Shown here: one piece after another, positions 20,378-32,057 of the stretch
Layout of the letters: every line of letters starts with the position of its first letter
Numbering within the stretch: the first letter of the stretch is position 1
Source of the DNA: Vitrella brassicaformis CCMP3155
Lineage: Eukaryota; Protista; Chromerida
Length of the DNA: 64,000 nucleotides
Reading direction: 5' to 3'
NCBI GenBank assembly: GCA_001179505.1
Contig: CDMY01000399.1
Location: 22,685-86,684 of the forward strand
Notes under the pieces: generated by a model
Told to the model about the DNA's origin: nothing
The model's input: the letters and a program-made list of their open reading frames with translations, nothing else
Databases searched by the model: none
Made by a program: the position numbers and the translations under genes

Positions 20378-22217
20378 TCAAGAGAAGACCGCCTGAAAAG
20401 CGTCGCTCCAGGCTACGCTCCACCTGAGACACAACAAGCAACATGGAGACGGAGAATAGAAATCGTGAGAGGCGCGGTAGGAGGGGAGGCCACTCGTTTG
20501 TGTGTACCTCCAGTATGCTCTGAACACACGAGAGTTCACACCAGCAGCACCCCACAGCCAATACACAATCCTGCGCGGCACGAATGCACACGGACAGTCA
20601 GGAGTGGTTGTGTCTCCCCTATTGCTTGGGTGTGTGTGCGTGCCTTGTGTCCAGGTTGGACAGGAGAGTGTATGGCATGTGCGCGTCCAGCGGCTCGTCC
20701 GAGTCGGTGATCACCATCCCATTCGCCACCAGGTGCGAGTCCAGCGTGTAGATCAGCTCCAAACCAGACAACTGAAAACGAGAAACCGGCAATTTCTTTT
20801 GAAAGTGGCATCCAGGCGTACACGTGCTTTTACCTGTGTTGATCTTCTCGCACCAGTGACGCGGGCAGGGCCAGACGGCCAGGAAATCGAGGCATTTGGT
20901 GGCGCGGCGGGCGACACGGCCGCCTCAGTGACATTGCTCCTTCCTGCCGCACTGTCGCCCCCTCCTCTTCTGTGCCAACATCGTGATGGCATTTCTTGCG
21001 CGGCGTCTGGCTCTCCTCCGGAATGGCGGCTGGGCGGCCCTACTGTCTCAATCCAGTCGCCAGGCATCACCTGATCGGCACTGACGACATGCCGGCCCCT
21101 CCCTCTTCTCACCACAGGCAGCCTGTGAGAGGGCGACAGACGGAGAGACACCGATGCCGACGATGAGGAGCATGGTGGCGGTGCATCCTCAGTCCTTGTG
21201 GCCTCGATGTCGATCACACGAGTCGGCCTCACTGCACACAAAGGGTGCACAGACGCAGGCAGCCACTTATGGAATACAAAGAGGTAGACGTGTGTGCGTG
21301 TTGTCCCTGACGTACTTGGGTACGACTCCCTGAAGTACACCTCTGTCAGTCTGGGCTGCCCTCCTGCGTTCCCGTCGTATGACAGTATCCGATCGCCCAC
21401 ACGCACCTCAGACGCCGCCACGGCCTCCAGCGGCTGAAACGGCTTGGTTGCTCTCTTTTCCGCTTTCAAAGCCTCCTTGTCCGGCCTTTTGGCCATGATC
21501 CCAACACCCAGCAACAGATCGATAAGGCGACCGATGACCAGGAAGAGTGACATGACACGACTCACTTCGCCGAGACTGCTACGGCGAAAGAAGTGAGCCT
21601 CAGTGTTTCCTCCCCTGTGTTGGAACGAGTGGTGCAGGCGGGAGCTCAGCGATTGAAATGATGACAACGGATCTCCTGTGTTGGATAATCGGACCAGCGG
21701 CCGTGGTGTCTCGTTGTGTGTCGGGACCCTCCAGATGGTGGCATTGGGGTCGATGCACGTTTTCTGCGAAAAGGACTGTGCGCAATTGAGCGGCTCGTCA
21801 GGCTGGCCGACCCACGTGCCCCAGAGACACTGGTAGTCTACAGCACAAACACACACACGCACACATACAGACACACTTACATTCGCTGTGTCGAAGCGAA
21901 GCGTGTATCTTCGACGTACGTTTGCCTGATCTCTCGCCGTGGAGTCTCGCCATCGGGTTGGCCATCTGTTGTGGCCAAAACCACTTGAAGTAATAGACAT
22001 GCCTACATGACAGACAGACAGATACACGTCAGCCAGCGTCAATGGATGGATGGAGGGATGGAGGGACGGAGGGATGGAGGGATGGAGGGATGGGTGGCGT
22101 GTCGACATACACGCTGCTGGGGGGCCCGATGCGGAAGATTCTCCAGATTTTGACTACCGTGTTGACGGCCCAGGCTATCACGGCGGGTCCACCCTCATAG
22201 GGCGCTCGCGGCGGCAT
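20378..22217 (-). CDS. Hedgehog-type Hint (Hog) domain region; probably the 3' part of the Sushi gene, possibly a separate gene
   Basis: Spliced reading: KT|CIDPNATIWRV (Cys1 at 21755-21757), VAASEVRVGDRILSYD, LTEVYFRES, SLRLSPSHRLPV (T/S-x-x-H), VVSADQVMPGDWI, ARVTGARRS, LELIYTLDSHLVANGMVIT, then amphipathic tail DAHMPYTLLSNLDTRIVYWLWGAAGVNSRVFRAYWRW..*. All exon phases join consistently. Confidence 0.75.
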
Positions 22218-25200
22218 GATTCCTCATAGGGTTTCTTGCCTATACCGGTCTCTATCGTTCGCCGACGCTGCAAACAACCTGCGTGGACGGGTAAAGTCAT
22301 GACAAACACATAGGGGAGGGAGGGAGGATGGGTGGACAGACAGATTTTGTCCGTCTGTCTGTCTGTCTGTCTGCCTGTCTGTATGCCTGACACACTCTGT
22401 CATTCATTTGTTACCGAAGCCGCCGCCTCTGACAGTGATGTTCCTTCCGGGCACGTCTCTCATCCACTCATCACCGTGGTAAGGGGAAACGCCGGTCTGC
22501 GTCCCCCAGTACTGGGCTGTGATCGTGACCCTCCCTGACGAACCAACAAACGAAGCAAGGAACAGACAATGAACGCAGAAATTGCAGAACGCTGCGCTTA
22601 CCTGCGCTGTGAGAAAGGGTGAATAGTTTCTCCTGGTCCTCCTGCAAGGAAAACACCACAGTGTGTGACGAATCAATCATTGGTCGAGCAACTGGCAAGC
22701 TGCCGTTGCGTCATTTTCCTCTTGGTGTGCACTGCCAGGCAAAGCAAGCGCACCGACCATGAAATCCGCGAGGGTGAAGTTCTCCGTTCTCCCTGACAGA
22801 CAGGAGAGGTACACATGGGGGGATCCATGCACCCGTCATTCATCTACGTATCGGTGTGTGTGTCTCTCTTGAACCATTTCTGTCGCTCACCAACGAAGTC
22901 GTCCTTAATCGGGTCTTGATCCCACAGAGCCAGGTACCACCACTTTGTACGGCTGAACATTATCGGGCCAAGCTGCGGATCGGCAGGCACATGTGGGATG
23001 CATGAAGGGGAGCAAGCGCCATTGGTTCGTCTTTGTGGTCGTCCAATCCACCGCCACACCCACCCTGTTGGGCCATTGTTGAACGATGGCCTCCTTCCCA
23101 CTGCCTCTGTGTTCTTCGCCTTTGACGACCGGCAGGCTGTGCGGCGACTCAAGCCTGCACTTGCTCTCCTTCATCTCGGCCTCACACAGCCTCCCGTAGA
23201 AGTCACCCACGCCGACCAGGTCATCGTCACCCAGCCGGTCCTTGTCACGACATATCCTGAATCCCAACGCATGCATGCATATCTCCATATGTGCCTGTTG
23301 ATTTCGTCACTCAGTCGACGGCGTACATACATCGGGCCGACTTTGAGGAAAGCTGTCCTGGGCTCGGCCTCCTGTATGGGGCCTTCCGATTCGTTCTTCT
23401 GCCCGCCGATCCTCCCCGCGATGTCCCATTCGGCTGCAACGGTCTTGTTTAGCTTGGGCTGGGGCTTCTCGCAGCCAGGTGTGTAGCAGAAGGCGTAGTA
23501 TCTCGCCCGATGCCGCCGCACCCATGGGCGCTGCTTGACAAAGTCGTCGTAGATGAGGTTTTCGAACTCGACAGACAGGGGGCCGGCCACATTGTAGCGG
23601 ACCGTCTTGTGGGGCTCGCGAAAGGGCAGGGGGCACATCTCTGGTGGGTGCAGTGTGTGTGGGAGAGACACACACAGACAGGCAGGGGATGCATATGTGC
23701 TGTCCCGCCGTGGTTCGCTCACTGATGCAGGTGAAGGGTGTAGTGAGGTAGCCGTTAAAACACTGAGTCTTGAATGCAGGCCGGTCATCCCAAGTGGCTT
23801 GCTGCGGCTCAGGCAGGTAACCATTGGCACACCGCACCTCTGTCTCGGCTCCAGGTACCACAAGCCCATGCATTAGGGGCAGGGGGTAGCCTTTCTCTGG
23901 GTGGTAGTAGTTCTGCTCCCTCCCGTCGGCGTACACCATCTCATAACCAAACGGCTCGCACATCGCTGCGGTGGACAGACAGGATCACACAAACTCTGCT
24001 GTGTCCCGTCCGCTGCTTCCCCCTCCCTCCATCCCTTGGTTACGGTGGCACTGCATCTCGGGCTCAGACCAGTGGCCGTTGTTGCAGTGGACCTCTGACG
24101 TATAAGGCGGATCGAGCACGTTGGTGGCAAATGTCCACCTGAAACCAATCACACACGCACGGACATCATCAGCATTGCCCGTAGCACCAAACCAGCATAC
24201 ATACTGACTGACTGACCTGCATTTGAGTCTGTCTGCGGGTGCCTTTCCGCCTTCAGCCGGGTAGACAAATGAGTCGTTGGTGCAGCAGGAGACCGTCCGT
24301 GAGGCGCCGTTCCGCACAGTGCCGGTGTTGTAGACGGTGTCCATGCCTGTCCCGCTGCGCTCGACAATCATGGAGATGCCGAAGCGGCTGTCGTGGGTGT
24401 AGTCCTCCTCAGGCACGTACTCTGGGCAGTTGGCTGTGAGTGAGTGGGGACAAAGCACATATGTGCCAACGGGGATTCTCTGTCTGAATGTCTCTCTCTC
24501 TCTCTCTCTCTATGGCTGACGTTCACAGATGAGGAGACGCGTGCTGTAGTCGCCATCCTCGCATGTGATAAACTGCCGGTCAGGCATACCGGACTGAGTG
24601 AACACCATCGACTGCCCATCCATCGAACATGCCATCGAGTCACACAAAGACACACCCATCTTGATTGACAATTTCTCTTGACTCTTCCTCCATCTGTGCT
24701 TACGTCTGAGTGCCTGATGGCGCATCGTATCTGAAGTGACTTGCCGGCCGGGAACAGTGATTCCGTGAGGTGGTCCCGTGGCCGGACGATCTGATACCGC
24801 GACTGGTTCATGACGGCGATGTCATTCGCCAGCGCCCACTGGACGTAATCGATGCACATCTCTGACGAACACGGTGAATCGACAGACACAGAGAGACAGA
24901 CAGACAGACAGACATGTGTCGCTTCCACCCTCTGTGCGTGTGTGTGTGTGTGTCTGTGTGTGTGTTGCCCCCCCTCAGTGCTCACTTCTGCATCTCAGTT
25001 CCATCGGCCACCAGTGTCCATCGTTGCACTCGATGGTCTCGGGCTCTGAGCCGCTGATGGGCGAGAAGGTGCGTGCGCAAGACACCGATATGACGGTGCC
25101 GTGCCGCAGCGACTCGGACCCGCCCTCGATGGCGTATTTGGCCATCGACTCGCCCATGCCATCGAAATACACCTGCAACTCAGGGCAGTCACCTAGACAG

Positions 25201-31200: not shown

Positions 31201-32057
31201 GATCAAACCAAGGTACACCGACTCAGGATCCACCTCGATCGTCGTGCCCTCAGCGTCTTGATGGACGGTGTATGCGGCCGATGCGCCCAGCCGGAAGCCC
31301 CAGAAGTTGTCGAGAAAGACGACTGGCTGCCCTGGTGGGGGAGGCCGGTCGAACGCCAGGAGAAGGGCGAAGGTGAATCCCTCGCTTTGGGACTCGGCCC
31401 ATCGGTAGCAAACGCGCAAATGGCCGCTTGGTGGCGTGATGAGATACCGACCAGGCCCGAATCCTGCATTAAGATTGACATTACATCATGAGAGCAGTGA
31501 GTGCAGGACTTAACTGACTTCACTCACTTGTCCTTACCAATCCATGTGACGACACCGCCTGTGTGTGGGTCATCTCTGCAGCCACAAGGAAACCCGGCAC
31601 AGCCACGTACGGTACCGAAATGTCAGTCTGTGTGCATTGATAGCATATGAGCTTACGACTGGTGCAGCAGCGGCGGATGGTCCTCTGCATCAAACACCTG
31701 CATATTGACGCCCAGCGCCCGGTCCCGCCAGCTCCACGGCAGCCACTTGTCCTCAGCCGAAACCTTCAGCGATATCACCTCCGCCCGACGCACATCGCAC
31801 TCGGGCACCTTGTCGCCCTTCTCCAGCTCAGCCTCCACCTCCTTCCACCGATTCTCGCCTATCTGCGCCCGCAGCACATCCGAATCGGACGGCGCCGGCT
31901 GCTGCTGCCGTACCAATTTATGGCTCTGTATTGCGCTGAGCCGCCCGACCTCTGCACTGCTGCCTGGGCCGCTTTGCAGTGGCTGGCTGGCCGATACAGT
32001 GATGAAGACAGCGCAGGTGACGGCGAAGATGGGGAGCGAAATGCGCCGGGCCGCCAT
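22178..32057 (-). CDS. Giant secreted protein: signal peptide, LamG-like, CGDG..EECD Cys repeat, ~20 Sushi/CCP-like modules, C2 domain, IPT/TIG-like start
   Basis: Signal peptide MAARRISLPIFAVTCAVFITVSASQ. LamG-like LYHFVMSQSTLQIFKMGRL..PLSLG..CFRGRVRYMHY. RCGDGEVDAETEECDPEKTPDDCSCNC. Repeated C..(Y/R)HG.....C.....C..G.W....L.C modules (about 20 by eye, 30.5-23.7 kb). C2 motifs DDDLVGVGDFY and LALWDQDPIKDDFVG..GRVTITAQY. SPYHG..GRNITVRGGGF. Confidence 0.85.

What the first reader, a model, noticed from the sequence alone, without database searches (positions are those of the whole stretch)
20378..32057. Candidate Hedgehog-like self-cleaving giant adhesin (LamG-Sushi x~20-C2-IPT-Hog)
A signal-peptide protein with ~20 Sushi modules shows no transmembrane or GPI anchor if it ends at 22178, and its IPT-like domain would be cut in half. 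The same-strand Hint ORF overlaps it by 40 nt, lacks its own signal peptide, and opens with PP..PY.GGPAVIAWAVN, which resembles the second half of an IPT domain. Known: Hog domains cleave at Cys1 and can attach a sterol to the N-terminal fragment. Inference: one ~11.7-kb gene whose ectodomain is released and lipid-anchored by autoprocessing, a hedgehog-like mechanism on an unrelated adhesin.
Basis: partly seen in the sequence, partly recalled or inferred. Interest (0 to 1): 0.9.

Follow-up and report, generated by a model that had tools for sequence, protein, structure and literature searches.

The report
Frameshifted giant Sushi-array Hedgehog-type autoprocessing gene
This is one copy of a Vitrella (coral-associated alga) gene family that joins a giant secreted Sushi-repeat protein to a Hedgehog-type self-cleaving domain, but in this copy a one-base deletion at the junction splits the reading frame, which is why the genome annotation shows two genes.

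Summary
These are not two ORFs. They are about 40 short exons of Vitrella brassicaformis CCMP3155, annotated as two genes (P0009, 2435 aa; P0001, 400 aa).

Confirmed:
- A signal peptide and no other TM segment.
- About 17-19 Sushi/CCP modules (profile hits complement factor H, E=2.5e-11).
- A real Hedgehog-type Hint fold. The family profile hits only Hedgehog structures in PDB, and the best Foldseek matches of the AF2 model are 1AT0 and 6TYY.
- Conserved Cys1, S-P-S-H and a two-helix tail.

LamG and C2 have lead-level support only. IPT has none.

Four full-length paralogues (P0002, P0003, P0006, P0008; 2679-2886 aa) carry array and Hint in one ORF, and two shorter models (P0004, P0005) also end in the Hint domain. 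Conserved coding sequence (84-89% identity) runs upstream of P0001's annotated Met. So the Hint ORF is not an independent gene.

Against P0002, junction exon 22278-22111 has a 1-nt deletion and a TGG>TGA change. No RNA covers it, so whether a fused protein is still made (splice bypass, assembly error) is open.

Hog domains on non-Hedgehog cargo are known in alveolates. This is a new variant, of moderate interest. First-stage readers noted paralogous loci elsewhere in this genome.

The parts
31986..32057 (-). Start codon (32057) and signal-peptide-like N-terminus (MAARRISLPIFAVTCAVFITVSAS)
   Evidence: Kyte-Doolittle peak 2.0 at aa 6-24, the only hydrophobic segment in P0009.
30976..31900 (-). 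N-terminal about 300-aa region, possibly ConA-like/LamG. Exons 32057-31656, 31574-31536, 31461-30976.
   Evidence: Exon map. The homologous part of P0002 has ESM-Atlas feature hits to Laminin_G_3 clusters (score 0.96). No Pfam hit. Lead only.
23724..30540 (-). Array of about 17-19 Sushi/CCP modules, roughly one per exon or exon pair
   Evidence: Motif scan. Profile hits. Profile against PDB: complement factor H, E=2.5e-11. Exons.
23330..23638 (-). First half (C1, C2) of the last, split Sushi module (KMCPLPFRE...YYAFCYTPGC...)
   Evidence: Same arrangement in P0002, P0004, P0005 and P0008.
23256..23329 (-). GT-AG intron confirmed by RNA
   Evidence: Joint in a contig of RNA-like run X1 that is absent from DNA runs X2 and X3. 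Matches the P0009 model.
22600..23255 (-). C2-like insert (exons 23255-23064, 22972-22889, 22790-22758, 22641-22600), absent from the P0002 model
   Evidence: ESM-Atlas leads to C2 clusters (score 0.93). No Pfam hit.
22415..22532 (-). Exon ending ...NITVRGGGFG with a phase-1 donor (intron 22414-22279)
   Evidence: Homologous to P0002 ...KRITVRGGASG.
22111..22278 (-). Junction exon carrying the lesion. Frame A (CLQRRRTIETGIGKK...) runs to stop 22180-22178. Frame B (GIMPP...AVNTVVKIWRIFRIGPPSS) runs from 22223. There is a 1-nt deletion near 22233, and TGA at 22226-22224 where P0002 has TGG. There is also a 36-nt in-frame insertion relative to P0002.
   Evidence: DNA alignment with L002. Exon is 168 nt with (len-4) mod 3 = 2, against 133 nt and 0 in P0002. 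Frame B codon log-odds +14.4, against an off-frame maximum of 8.1. 84% identity to P0002. DNA contigs of X2 and X3 are identical here.
21920..22002 (-). Exon HVYYFKWFWPQQ-MANPMARLHGERSGK. The annotated start of P0001 (ATG 21965) lies inside it.
   Evidence: 89% identical to P0002 including the residues upstream of the Met. The YxKWxW motif is conserved in P0003-P0005 and P0008.
21782..21837 (-). Second half (C3, C4) of the split last Sushi module (YQCLWGTWVGQPDEPLNC)
   Evidence: Conserved in all paralogues.
21755..21760 (-). Predicted scissile bond Thr|Cys1 (ACG TGC) at the start of the Hint domain
   Evidence: Cys is invariant in six family members. It corresponds to Cys1 of the Hint module.
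20643..21757 (-). Hint module (exons 21837-21316, 21231-20834, 20771-20643). Motifs: VGDRILS (21400-), YFRES, LSPSH (21136-21125), PGDWI, IYTLDSHLVANGMVITDSDEPLD. A hydrophobic insertion of about 100 aa follows strand 1.
   Evidence: Exons. Alignment. Family profile against PDB: only Hedgehog (6TYY, 1AT0, 6TD6; E=0.004-0.02). AF2 pTM 0.62 with core pLDDT 80-95. Foldseek best matches 1AT0 and 6TYY (E=1.5e-6, TM 0.76). AFDB Hint and Hedgehog clusters. RNA contig covers 21662-21507.
20381..20680 (-). SRR/ARR-like C-terminal tail (NLDTRIVYWLWGAAGVNSRVFRAYWRWSVAWSDAFQAVFS), then stop 20380-20378. Introns 20642-20570 (GC-AG) and 20506-20423 (GT-AG) are both confirmed by RNA.
   Evidence: Two helices predicted at aa 314-334 and 337-357 of the model, pLDDT 82-90. 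Conserved in all paralogues.

Best explanation
The locus is one member of a Vitrella brassicaformis family of giant secreted proteins. At least seven family members were seen.

Architecture of the family: signal peptide, a ConA/LamG-like N-domain, about 18 Sushi/CCP modules, a last Sushi module split by a variable insert, then a Hedgehog-type Hint domain with a two-helix SRR/ARR-like tail (a Hog-like domain).

Inferred family mechanism, by homology to Hedgehog C-terminal domains:
1. In the secretory pathway, Cys1 of the Hint domain attacks the preceding peptide bond (...SQKT|C) and forms a thioester. The S-P-S-H Ser and His assist.
2. A second nucleophile (water, or a sterol or other lipid positioned by the helical tail) resolves the thioester.
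3. This releases the whole Sushi-array ectodomain from the Hog domain, possibly with a C-terminal adduct.

At this copy, junction exon 22278-22111 has lost one base. It also reads TGA where paralogue P0002 has TGG.
- If the conserved splice sites are used, translation stops at 22178 after 2435 aa, inside the split Sushi module.
- The downstream conserved exons, including the Hint domain, would then be left untranslated. This is why the genome annotation calls two genes.
- The 400-aa 'Hint protein' is not an independent gene.
- The lesion is either very recent, or bypassed by splicing, or an assembly error, because the downstream exons show no decay.

Shown: the architecture, the Hint fold, the conserved residues, the lesion, and transcription with splicing of both parts.
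Inferred: the cleavage chemistry, any lipid adduct, and the fate of this copy's product.

Paralogues:
- P0002, P0003, P0006 and P0008 (2679-2886 aa) have the Hint domain at the C-terminus of Sushi arrays. P0004 and P0005 are shorter versions.
- P0002 is colinear with the window from 32015 to 20501.

The junction:
- Against P0002 there is a 1-nt deletion, TGG>TGA and a 36-nt in-frame insertion.
- Exon length is 168 nt (out of phase) against 133 nt (in phase) in P0002.
- Frame B scores as coding: +14.4, against an off-frame maximum of 8.1 in 128 windows.
- Sequence just after the lesion and upstream of P0001's Met is 84% and 89% identical to P0002.

The Hint domain:
- Cys1, GD, SPxH and other columns are invariant.
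- The family profile hits only Drosophila Hedgehog autoprocessing-domain structures, with D46 aligned to Glu.
- Pfam Hint PF01079 scores 28.6 bits in P0003, against a cut-off of 29.7.
- AF2 model pTM 0.62. Foldseek best matches 1AT0 and 6TYY, then inteins and BIL.
- AFDB hits are Hint and Hedgehog clusters.

The Sushi array:
-.

RNA:
- Contigs of run X1 show spliced exons both upstream (23453-23226) and downstream (20713-20506) of the junction at similar depth.

No decay downstream of the lesion:
- 19 window-specific amino-acid changes, against 53 and 54 in P0008 and P0002.
Against: - No RNA covers 22000-22500, so the actual mRNA across the lesion is unknown.
- In-frame bypasses exist on paper: alternative acceptors at 22224/22223 and 22205/22204, and a 71-nt GT..AG segment at 22245-22175. 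The product could therefore still be full length.
- The DNA contigs that confirm the lesion may come from the data used for the assembly.
- Pfam does not reach its threshold for Hint in any family member, and finds nothing in P0001 or P0009.
- The residue before Cys1 is Thr, not the Gly of Hedgehog.
- The D46-equivalent is Glu here and Gln or Arg in three paralogues.
- The Hint domain carries a roughly 100-aa hydrophobic insertion of unknown effect.
Confidence: 0.72

Rival explanations
1. One reading: the locus makes one full-length protein of about 2800-2850 aa (LamG-Sushi array-Hog). The lesion-bearing stretch would be removed from the mRNA. Possible routes are an alternative 3' splice site downstream of the ancestral-frame TGA (the TGG>TGA change itself creates an AG at 22225-22224) or an extra 71-nt GT..AG intron at 22245-22175.
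For: - All three bypasses keep the reading frame into the conserved frame-B sequence.
- The strong coding signal in frame B begins only at about 22172, after the putative 71-nt segment: +10.1 there against +1.9 inside it.
- The downstream exons show no decay, and they are transcribed and spliced.
Against: - No read supports any bypass.
- The upstream acceptor at 22280-22279 is conserved with the paralogue and has the better pyrimidine tract. The alternative acceptors are purine-rich.
- With about 3 GT and about 7 AG in range, several in-frame pairs are expected by chance.
- The segment that would be removed is homologous to paralogue coding sequence.
Confidence: 0.3
2. The frameshift and the TGA are assembly or consensus errors, or a minor allele. 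The real gene would be intact, like P0002 and P0008.
For: - The downstream region is the slowest-evolving of the three lineages.
- The lesions lie next to a 10-nt direct repeat (CCCTATGAGG at 22231-22222 and 22202-22193), a context prone to slippage or misassembly.
Against: - Contigs of two DNA runs filed under different samples and studies (X2, X3) match 20200-22310 with no differences.
- Two separate differences would both have to be errors.
- Contigs drop rare variants, so a minor allele cannot be excluded.
Confidence: 0.12
3. The annotation is right. There are two independent genes: a 2435-aa secreted Sushi protein and a separate 400-aa cytosolic Hint protein that starts at Met 21965.
For: - The public annotation (GCA_001179505.1) calls them so.
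- P0001 has an ATG and an open spliced frame.
Against: - P0001 would start in the middle of a disulphide-bonded Sushi module, without a signal peptide.
- Conserved coding sequence continues upstream of its Met to the lesion.
- All paralogues are fused.
- Only 213 nt separate the two models.
- A Hint domain with almost no N-terminal cargo has nothing to process.
Confidence: 0.05
4. Programmed -1 ribosomal frameshifting or stop-codon recoding in the 46-nt overlap joins the two frames.
For: Frame B is -1 relative to frame A, and the two overlap over 22223-22178.
Against: - There is no X XXY YYZ heptamer in the overlap. The only heptamer (AAACCCT at 22234) is in the wrong phase and lies upstream of the frame-B TGA.
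- Intact paralogues need no recoding.
Confidence: 0.02

Closest known systems
Hedgehog C-terminal autoprocessing (Hog) domain, e.g. Drosophila Hh-C (PDB 1AT0, 6TYY)
   Same: - Hint fold; these are the best matches by both profile and structure.
- N-terminal catalytic Cys and the TxxH-type motif (here SPSH).
- An acidic residue aligned with D46.
- A hydrophobic two-helix tail after the Hint module, like the helix-loop-helix SRR (PMC7906309).
- Location at the C-terminus of a secreted cargo.
   Different: - About 14% identity.
- Thr rather than Gly before Cys1, Glu rather than Asp at the D46 position, and Ser rather than Thr in the motif.
- The motif-J Cys (SCY) is replaced by T-D-S-D.
- A hydrophobic insertion of about 100 aa follows strand 1.
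- The cargo is a giant Sushi array, not the Hedge signalling domain.
- No sterol transfer has been shown.
Non-metazoan Hog proteins (Burglin 2008, PMC2362128): Cryptosporidium and dinoflagellate Hog proteins, Monosiga Hoglet, Glomus GIN1
   Same: - A Hog domain fused to lineage-specific secreted N-terminal regions in protists, alveolates included.
- The motif-J cysteine is often replaced, as it is here.
   Different: - Those N-terminal regions are short or unrelated (about 100 aa with two Cys in Cryptosporidium, a cellulose-binding domain in Hoglet).
- None is a 2400-aa Sushi array.
- No homologue outside Vitrella was found at E<=1e-3 in 1.84 billion representatives, apart from one 130-aa environmental fragment.
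Nematode warthog/groundhog/quahog proteins
   Same: A Hog domain with an 'adduct recognition region' of uncertain ligand, processing unrelated secreted N-domains.
   Different: - Small proteins with Wart or Ground domains.
- A different lineage.
- No Sushi arrays.
Complement-control-protein (Sushi/CCP) arrays such as factor H, and apicomplexan/chromerid Sushi proteins (PMC4501334)
   Same: Long tandem arrays of four-Cys modules with the C..G.W...C signature. The window's profile finds factor H.
   Different: - Modules are longer (about 70-80 aa) and too divergent for Pfam in this copy.
- The array is followed by a Hog domain.
Rotifer EGF/Notch-like proteins with a C-terminal Hint domain (AFDB clusters A0A813QXX9, A0A3M7PJ10)
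   Same: Adhesion-type repeat cargo followed by a Hint domain. They are structural hits of the model.
   Different: - Known only from automatic names.
- EGF rather than Sushi repeats.
- Relationship not examined.

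Membership tests
Hog (Hedgehog-type Hint + SRR/ARR) autoprocessing domain | Hint fold | tested here: met
   AF2 on a 6-sequence alignment gives pTM 0.62 with core pLDDT 80-95. Foldseek PDB best matches are 1AT0 and 6TYY (E=1.5e-6, TM by target 0.76), followed by inteins and BIL. AFDB hits are Hint and Hedgehog clusters.
Hog (Hedgehog-type Hint + SRR/ARR) autoprocessing domain | Catalytic Cys as first residue of the Hint module | tested here: met
   Cys (window 21757-21755) is invariant in 6 of 6 family members.
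Hog (Hedgehog-type Hint + SRR/ARR) autoprocessing domain | TxxH motif (Thr326/His329 of Drosophila Hh) | tested here: met
   L-S-P-S-H aligns with V-T-P-A-H of 1AT0. His is invariant and Thr is replaced by Ser.
Hog (Hedgehog-type Hint + SRR/ARR) autoprocessing domain | Asp46 (D303), needed for sterol transfer | tested here: inconclusive
   The aligned residue is Glu in P0001, P0002 and P0003, and Gln or Arg in P0004, P0005 and P0006. The alignment rests on a 20-bit profile hit.
Hog (Hedgehog-type Hint + SRR/ARR) autoprocessing domain | C-terminal sterol/adduct recognition region (helix-loop-helix) after the Hint module | tested here: inconclusive
   A conserved tail of about 55-60 aa is predicted as two helices, pLDDT 82-90. 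Several AFDB Hog hits align through it. No sequence match to Hh motifs K or L was tested, and ligand binding is unknown.
Hog (Hedgehog-type Hint + SRR/ARR) autoprocessing domain | Pfam PF01079 (Hint module) at its gathering score | tested here: not met
   No hit in P0001. P0003 scores 28.6 bits against a cut-off of 29.7; P0004 scores 15.6 and P0006 14.6.
Hog (Hedgehog-type Hint + SRR/ARR) autoprocessing domain | Secreted cargo and Hog domain on one polypeptide | tested here: not met
   At this locus, as assembled, the frame breaks in exon 22278-22111. The feature is met in paralogues P0002, P0003, P0006 and P0008.
Hog (Hedgehog-type Hint + SRR/ARR) autoprocessing domain | Autocleavage at X|Cys and transfer of a sterol or other adduct | not testable with these tools
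   Needs biochemistry or mass spectrometry.
Intein (protein splicing) | C-terminal His-Asn followed by a Cys/Ser/Thr extein residue | tested here: not met
   The last Hint strand ends ...VANGMVITDSDEPLD, with no HN plus nucleophile, and is followed by the helical tail. Hedgehog ranks above inteins in both searches.
Sushi/CCP/SCR repeat | Module of about 60 aa with four Cys and a conserved Trp; recognisable by profile | tested here: met
   A profile of 12 window modules hits factor H, CFHR proteins, factor XIII B and DAF (best E=2.5e-11). 17-18 modules were found. Pfam Sushi is above threshold in paralogues P0003 and P0004 but absent in P0009.
IPT/TIG domain | Match to an IPT/TIG profile or fold | tested here: not met
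   No Pfam hit at E<=10 for window 22598-22407 or P0002:2160-2372, and none in the whole paralogues. The fold was not modelled.
LamG / ConA-like | Match to a LamG profile or fold | tested here: inconclusive
   No Pfam hit. By ESM-Atlas features, 60 of 100 nearest clusters are Laminin_G_3, score 0.96 but only 123 shared features.
C2 domain | Match to a C2 profile or fold | tested here: inconclusive
   No Pfam hit. By ESM-Atlas, 36 of 100 nearest clusters carry C2, score 0.93 with 170 shared features, but the recognition value is below the usual level.

The most novel reading that the evidence does not exclude
The Vitrella family uses its Hog domain as Hedgehog does. It would cleave at ...T|C and esterify the new C-terminus of a Sushi-array ectodomain of about 2400 aa to a sterol or other membrane lipid. 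A giant adhesin with no TM segment or GPI signal would then be lipid-anchored by autoprocessing. The Glu at the D46 position, the two-helix tail and the hydrophobic insertion in the Hint domain would form the lipid-handling site. At this locus, the frameshifted stretch would be spliced out as a newly made intron.
Probability: 0.2. Interest if true: 0.7.

Novelty: new variant of a known kind. Interest (0 to 1): 0.42.

Why it matters
Hog domains outside animals are known mostly from short ESTs with small or unknown cargo. Here a whole family in a chromerid, one of the photosynthetic relatives of Apicomplexa, couples the domain to giant Sushi-array surface proteins.

- If cleavage and lipid transfer occur, this would be a way to release or anchor adhesins that is not described in alveolates. 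It would also be a tractable non-animal system for asking what Hog domains attach.
- For genome annotation, P0009 and P0001 are two halves of one family member. The Vitrella Hint proteins are absent from the published chromerid HINT list.
- For this particular locus the result is more modest: a copy with a fresh frameshift whose fate needs one RT-PCR.

Tried and rejected
- Pfam on 20 stop-to-stop pieces, on P0001, P0009, P0002 and P0008: no hits. Domain calls had to come from custom profiles and structure.
- phmmer of P0001 against PDB: nothing.
- Single-sequence AF2 of P0001: pLDDT 37, unusable.
- The first representative search was lost and had to be repeated.
- A first word-indexed search with the 466-aa open frame found only P0001, because of the length filter.
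- My own dynamic-programming gene model reaches the Hint exons, but it mis-splices several places compared with the annotated models. I use it only to show that in-frame paths exist.
- A suspected intron at the GTGAGT near 21565 was rejected: an RNA contig runs through it and the annotation keeps it as exon.
- A donor at 21882 (GTAAGT) was dropped in favour of the annotated donor at 21919, which matches P0002.
- -1 frameshifting was rejected for lack of a slippery site.
- A 29-nt 'micro-intron' between the two CCCTATGAGG repeats was rejected: it has no GT..AG form, it is too short, and the segment is homologous to paralogue coding sequence.
- The P0008 locus is too divergent at the DNA level at the junction to add to the lesion call.
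- dN/dS was not attempted, because about 50% amino-acid identity implies saturated synonymous sites. A relative-rate count was used instead.

Full report
**What is at the coordinates**

The region has no long ORF. The longest open frame between 20300 and 32300 is 565 aa. The gene lies on the minus strand, with coding pieces in all three frames separated by short low-complexity stretches.

- ATG at 32057.
- A stop TGA at 22180-22178.
- A second frame that opens after TGA 22226-22224, with an ATG at 22217. This gives the 40-nt overlap.
- KT|CIDP at 21763-21749.
- A final TGA at 20380-20378.

A word-indexed search with the 466-aa open frame found the annotated product of the 3' part: P0001, 400 aa, 'Hint domain-containing protein', Vitrella brassicaformis CCMP3155. 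Its contig is CDMY01000399.1 of GCA_001179505.1. There an upstream 2435-aa gene ends at the 22178 stop. That protein, P0009, was later retrieved.

Mapping gives 32 exons for P0009 and 6 exons for P0001, with introns of 62-136 nt.

**RNA evidence**

One RNA-like run (X1, low depth) has three contigs on 20200-26150.
- One contig joins 23453-23330 to 23255-23226, a GT-AG intron.
- One joins 20713-20643 to 20569-20506 and continues into the exon at 20422. This confirms a GC-AG intron and a GT-AG intron.
- One runs unspliced through 21662-21507.

The joints are absent from DNA runs X2 and X3. Both halves are therefore transcribed and spliced, at similar depth. Nothing covers 22000-22500.

**Domains**

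- *Pfam.* It finds nothing in any window piece, in P0001 or in P0009.
- *Sushi.* A profile of 12 repeat modules from the window hits complement factor H (E=2.5e-11) and other CCP structures. The same profile finds 17-18 modules between 30108 and 23727, plus weaker ones, and 18 modules in P0002. 'About 20 Sushi' is fair.
- *Signal peptide and TM.* The N-terminus is signal-peptide-like, and P0009 has no other hydrophobic segment.
- *LamG.* The region has ESM-Atlas leads to Laminin_G_3.
- *C2.* The stretch 23255-22600 has leads to C2.
- *IPT.* It has no support.

**The Hint domain**

An exhaustive phmmer of P0001 against 1.84 billion representatives found only seven proteins. These were P0001 itself, five Vitrella paralogues, and a 130-aa environmental fragment. 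A further paralogue, P0008, came from a region search.

Aligned Hint-plus-tail regions have several invariant features:
- Cys1.
- the G-D of the V-G-D-R-V-L-S strand.
- L-x-L-S-P-x-H-x-L-P.
- A-x-x-V-x-x-G-D.
- the D-x-D-x-P-x-D strand end.
- a conserved N-L-D-T-R...Y-W-R tail.

The profile of this alignment hits only Drosophila Hedgehog autoprocessing-domain structures in PDB (6TYY, 1AT0, 6TD6; E=0.004-0.02). In that alignment SPSH falls on TPAH and Glu falls on D46.

Pfam PF01079 scores 28.6 bits in P0003, just under its 29.7 cut-off.

AF2 with the six-sequence alignment gave pTM 0.62 with core pLDDT 80-95 and two C-terminal helices.
- Foldseek ranks 1AT0 and 6TYY first (E=1.5e-6, TM by target 0.76), then inteins and BIL domains.
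- AFDB clusters give Hint and Hedgehog families.

The domain is a divergent Hedgehog-type Hint with an SRR/ARR-like tail. There is no His-Asn plus nucleophile, so it is not an intein.

**One gene or two**

- Four paralogues (P0002 2679 aa, P0003 2734 aa, P0006 2886 aa, P0008 2743 aa) carry array and Hint in one protein. P0002 is colinear with the window from 32015 to 20501.
- In all family members, the last Sushi module is split by a variable insert. C1 and C2 come before the insert and C3 and C4 after it. C4 lies 9-12 residues before Cys1.
- In the window, the annotated stop at 22178 falls inside that insert. P0001's annotated Met lies in the exon just before the C3-C4 half.
- The window's frame-B sequence is 84% identical to P0002, and exon 22002-21920 is 89% identical, including residues upstream of the Met.
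- Frame B scores +14.4 in a codon log-odds model. No off-frame window exceeds 8.1, and the annotated terminal frame scores 0.7.

The Hint part is therefore not an independent gene.

**The lesion**

DNA alignment with the P0002 locus shows that the window exon starting at the conserved acceptor (22278) is homologous in frame A up to G-I-G-K-K. After that point, relative to P0002:
- one base is missing (GAAGACC in P0002 against GAA-ACC in the window, near 22233);
- TGA (22226-22224) stands where P0002 has TGG;
- homology then continues in frame B (G-I-M-P-P against G-I-R-P-P), with a 36-nt in-frame insertion.

The exon is 168 nt, out of phase by one with its conserved flanking splice phases. The P0002 exon is 133 nt and in phase. 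Contigs of two DNA runs match the assembled sequence.

The 'overlapping ORFs' are the footprint of a frameshift.

**Possible rescues**

- No slippery heptamer lies in the overlap, so programmed frameshifting is unlikely.
- In-frame splice bypasses exist on paper: acceptors at about 22223 and 22204, or a 71-nt GT..AG segment at 22245-22175. Several such pairs are expected by chance, and none has read support.
- The downstream region shows no decay. It has 19 window-specific amino-acid changes, against 53 and 54 in P0008 and P0002. Upstream the counts are 209, 305 and 244.

The lesion is therefore recent, bypassed, or an artefact.

**Mechanism (inferred)**

By homology to Hedgehog C-terminal domains:
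1. Cys1 performs an N-to-S acyl shift at ...SQKT|C.
2. The thioester is resolved by water or by a lipid presented by the helical tail.
3. This frees the Sushi-array ectodomain.

The acidic residue at the D46 position (Glu in P0001, P0002, P0003, P0008) is compatible with adduct transfer. P0004, P0005 and P0006 have Gln or Arg there, which suggests plain cleavage in those. P0006 has a true C-terminal TM segment after the tail. None of this chemistry has been tested.

**Comparison with what is known**

- Hog domains on lineage-specific secreted cargo are known in alveolates and other protists, often with the motif-J cysteine replaced, as here (PMC2362128).
- The chromerid genome paper notes HINT domains and Sushi expansions in extracellular proteins. 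Its supplementary list gives HINT only for Chromera genes (PMC4501334).
- I found no paper describing Sushi-array-Hog proteins.

The family is thus a new variant of a known kind. This locus is a frameshifted member of it.

First-stage readers of this scan noted the same locus (s1-239427, s1-221926) and several paralogous loci elsewhere in the genome.

Noticed in passing
window 21725-21420 (P0001 aa 54-155): The Hint domains of P0001, P0002, P0003 and P0008 carry an insertion of about 60-110 aa between the first strand and the VGDRxLS strand. It contains a TM-like hydrophobic stretch (P0001 aa 107-131, KD 2.2). P0004, P0005 and P0006 lack it. It is present in RNA (contig 21662-21507).
   Followed up: partly
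L003 (P0008 aa 2313-2347): In paralogue P0008, the segment homologous to the window's frame-B junction exon is strongly hydrophobic (KD 2.17) and long enough for a TM helix or hairpin. That is odd inside an extracellular Sushi module.
   Followed up: no
window 20642-20570: A GC-AG intron (AAG|GCACGC...GCGCAG|G), confirmed by an RNA contig. Several other annotated introns of P0009 also appear to start with GC rather than GT.
   Followed up: partly
window 23255-22600: The window copy has four extra exons (a C2-like insert) inside the split last Sushi module. They are missing from the P0002 protein model. One of their introns is RNA-confirmed, so the insert is expressed.
   Followed up: partly
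window 22231-22222 and 22202-22193: A 10-nt direct repeat, CCCTATGAGG, flanks the lesion and the 36-nt insertion. This suggests slippage-type mutation at this spot.
   Followed up: no
window 30891-30615: A short Cys-rich stretch (QRCGDGEVDAETEECDPEKTPDDCSCNCKKKC) lies between the LamG-like region and the first Sushi module. It is conserved in P0002 and P0003. Its domain type was not identified.
   Followed up: no
P0007 (ENA, 130 aa, contig 2420 nt): [quoted passage not shown] It suggests a Vitrella-like organism carrying this family in an environmental sample.
   Followed up: no
window 62523-62822: A run of 300 N (assembly gap).
   Followed up: no
window 1627-4786, 10949-15366, 49298-52000: Other first-reader notes on this window (CHAT-STAND fusion, cyclin fusions, CKS). 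L001 gene calls show Cyclin_C and CKS Pfam hits downstream of the Hint gene.
   Followed up: no
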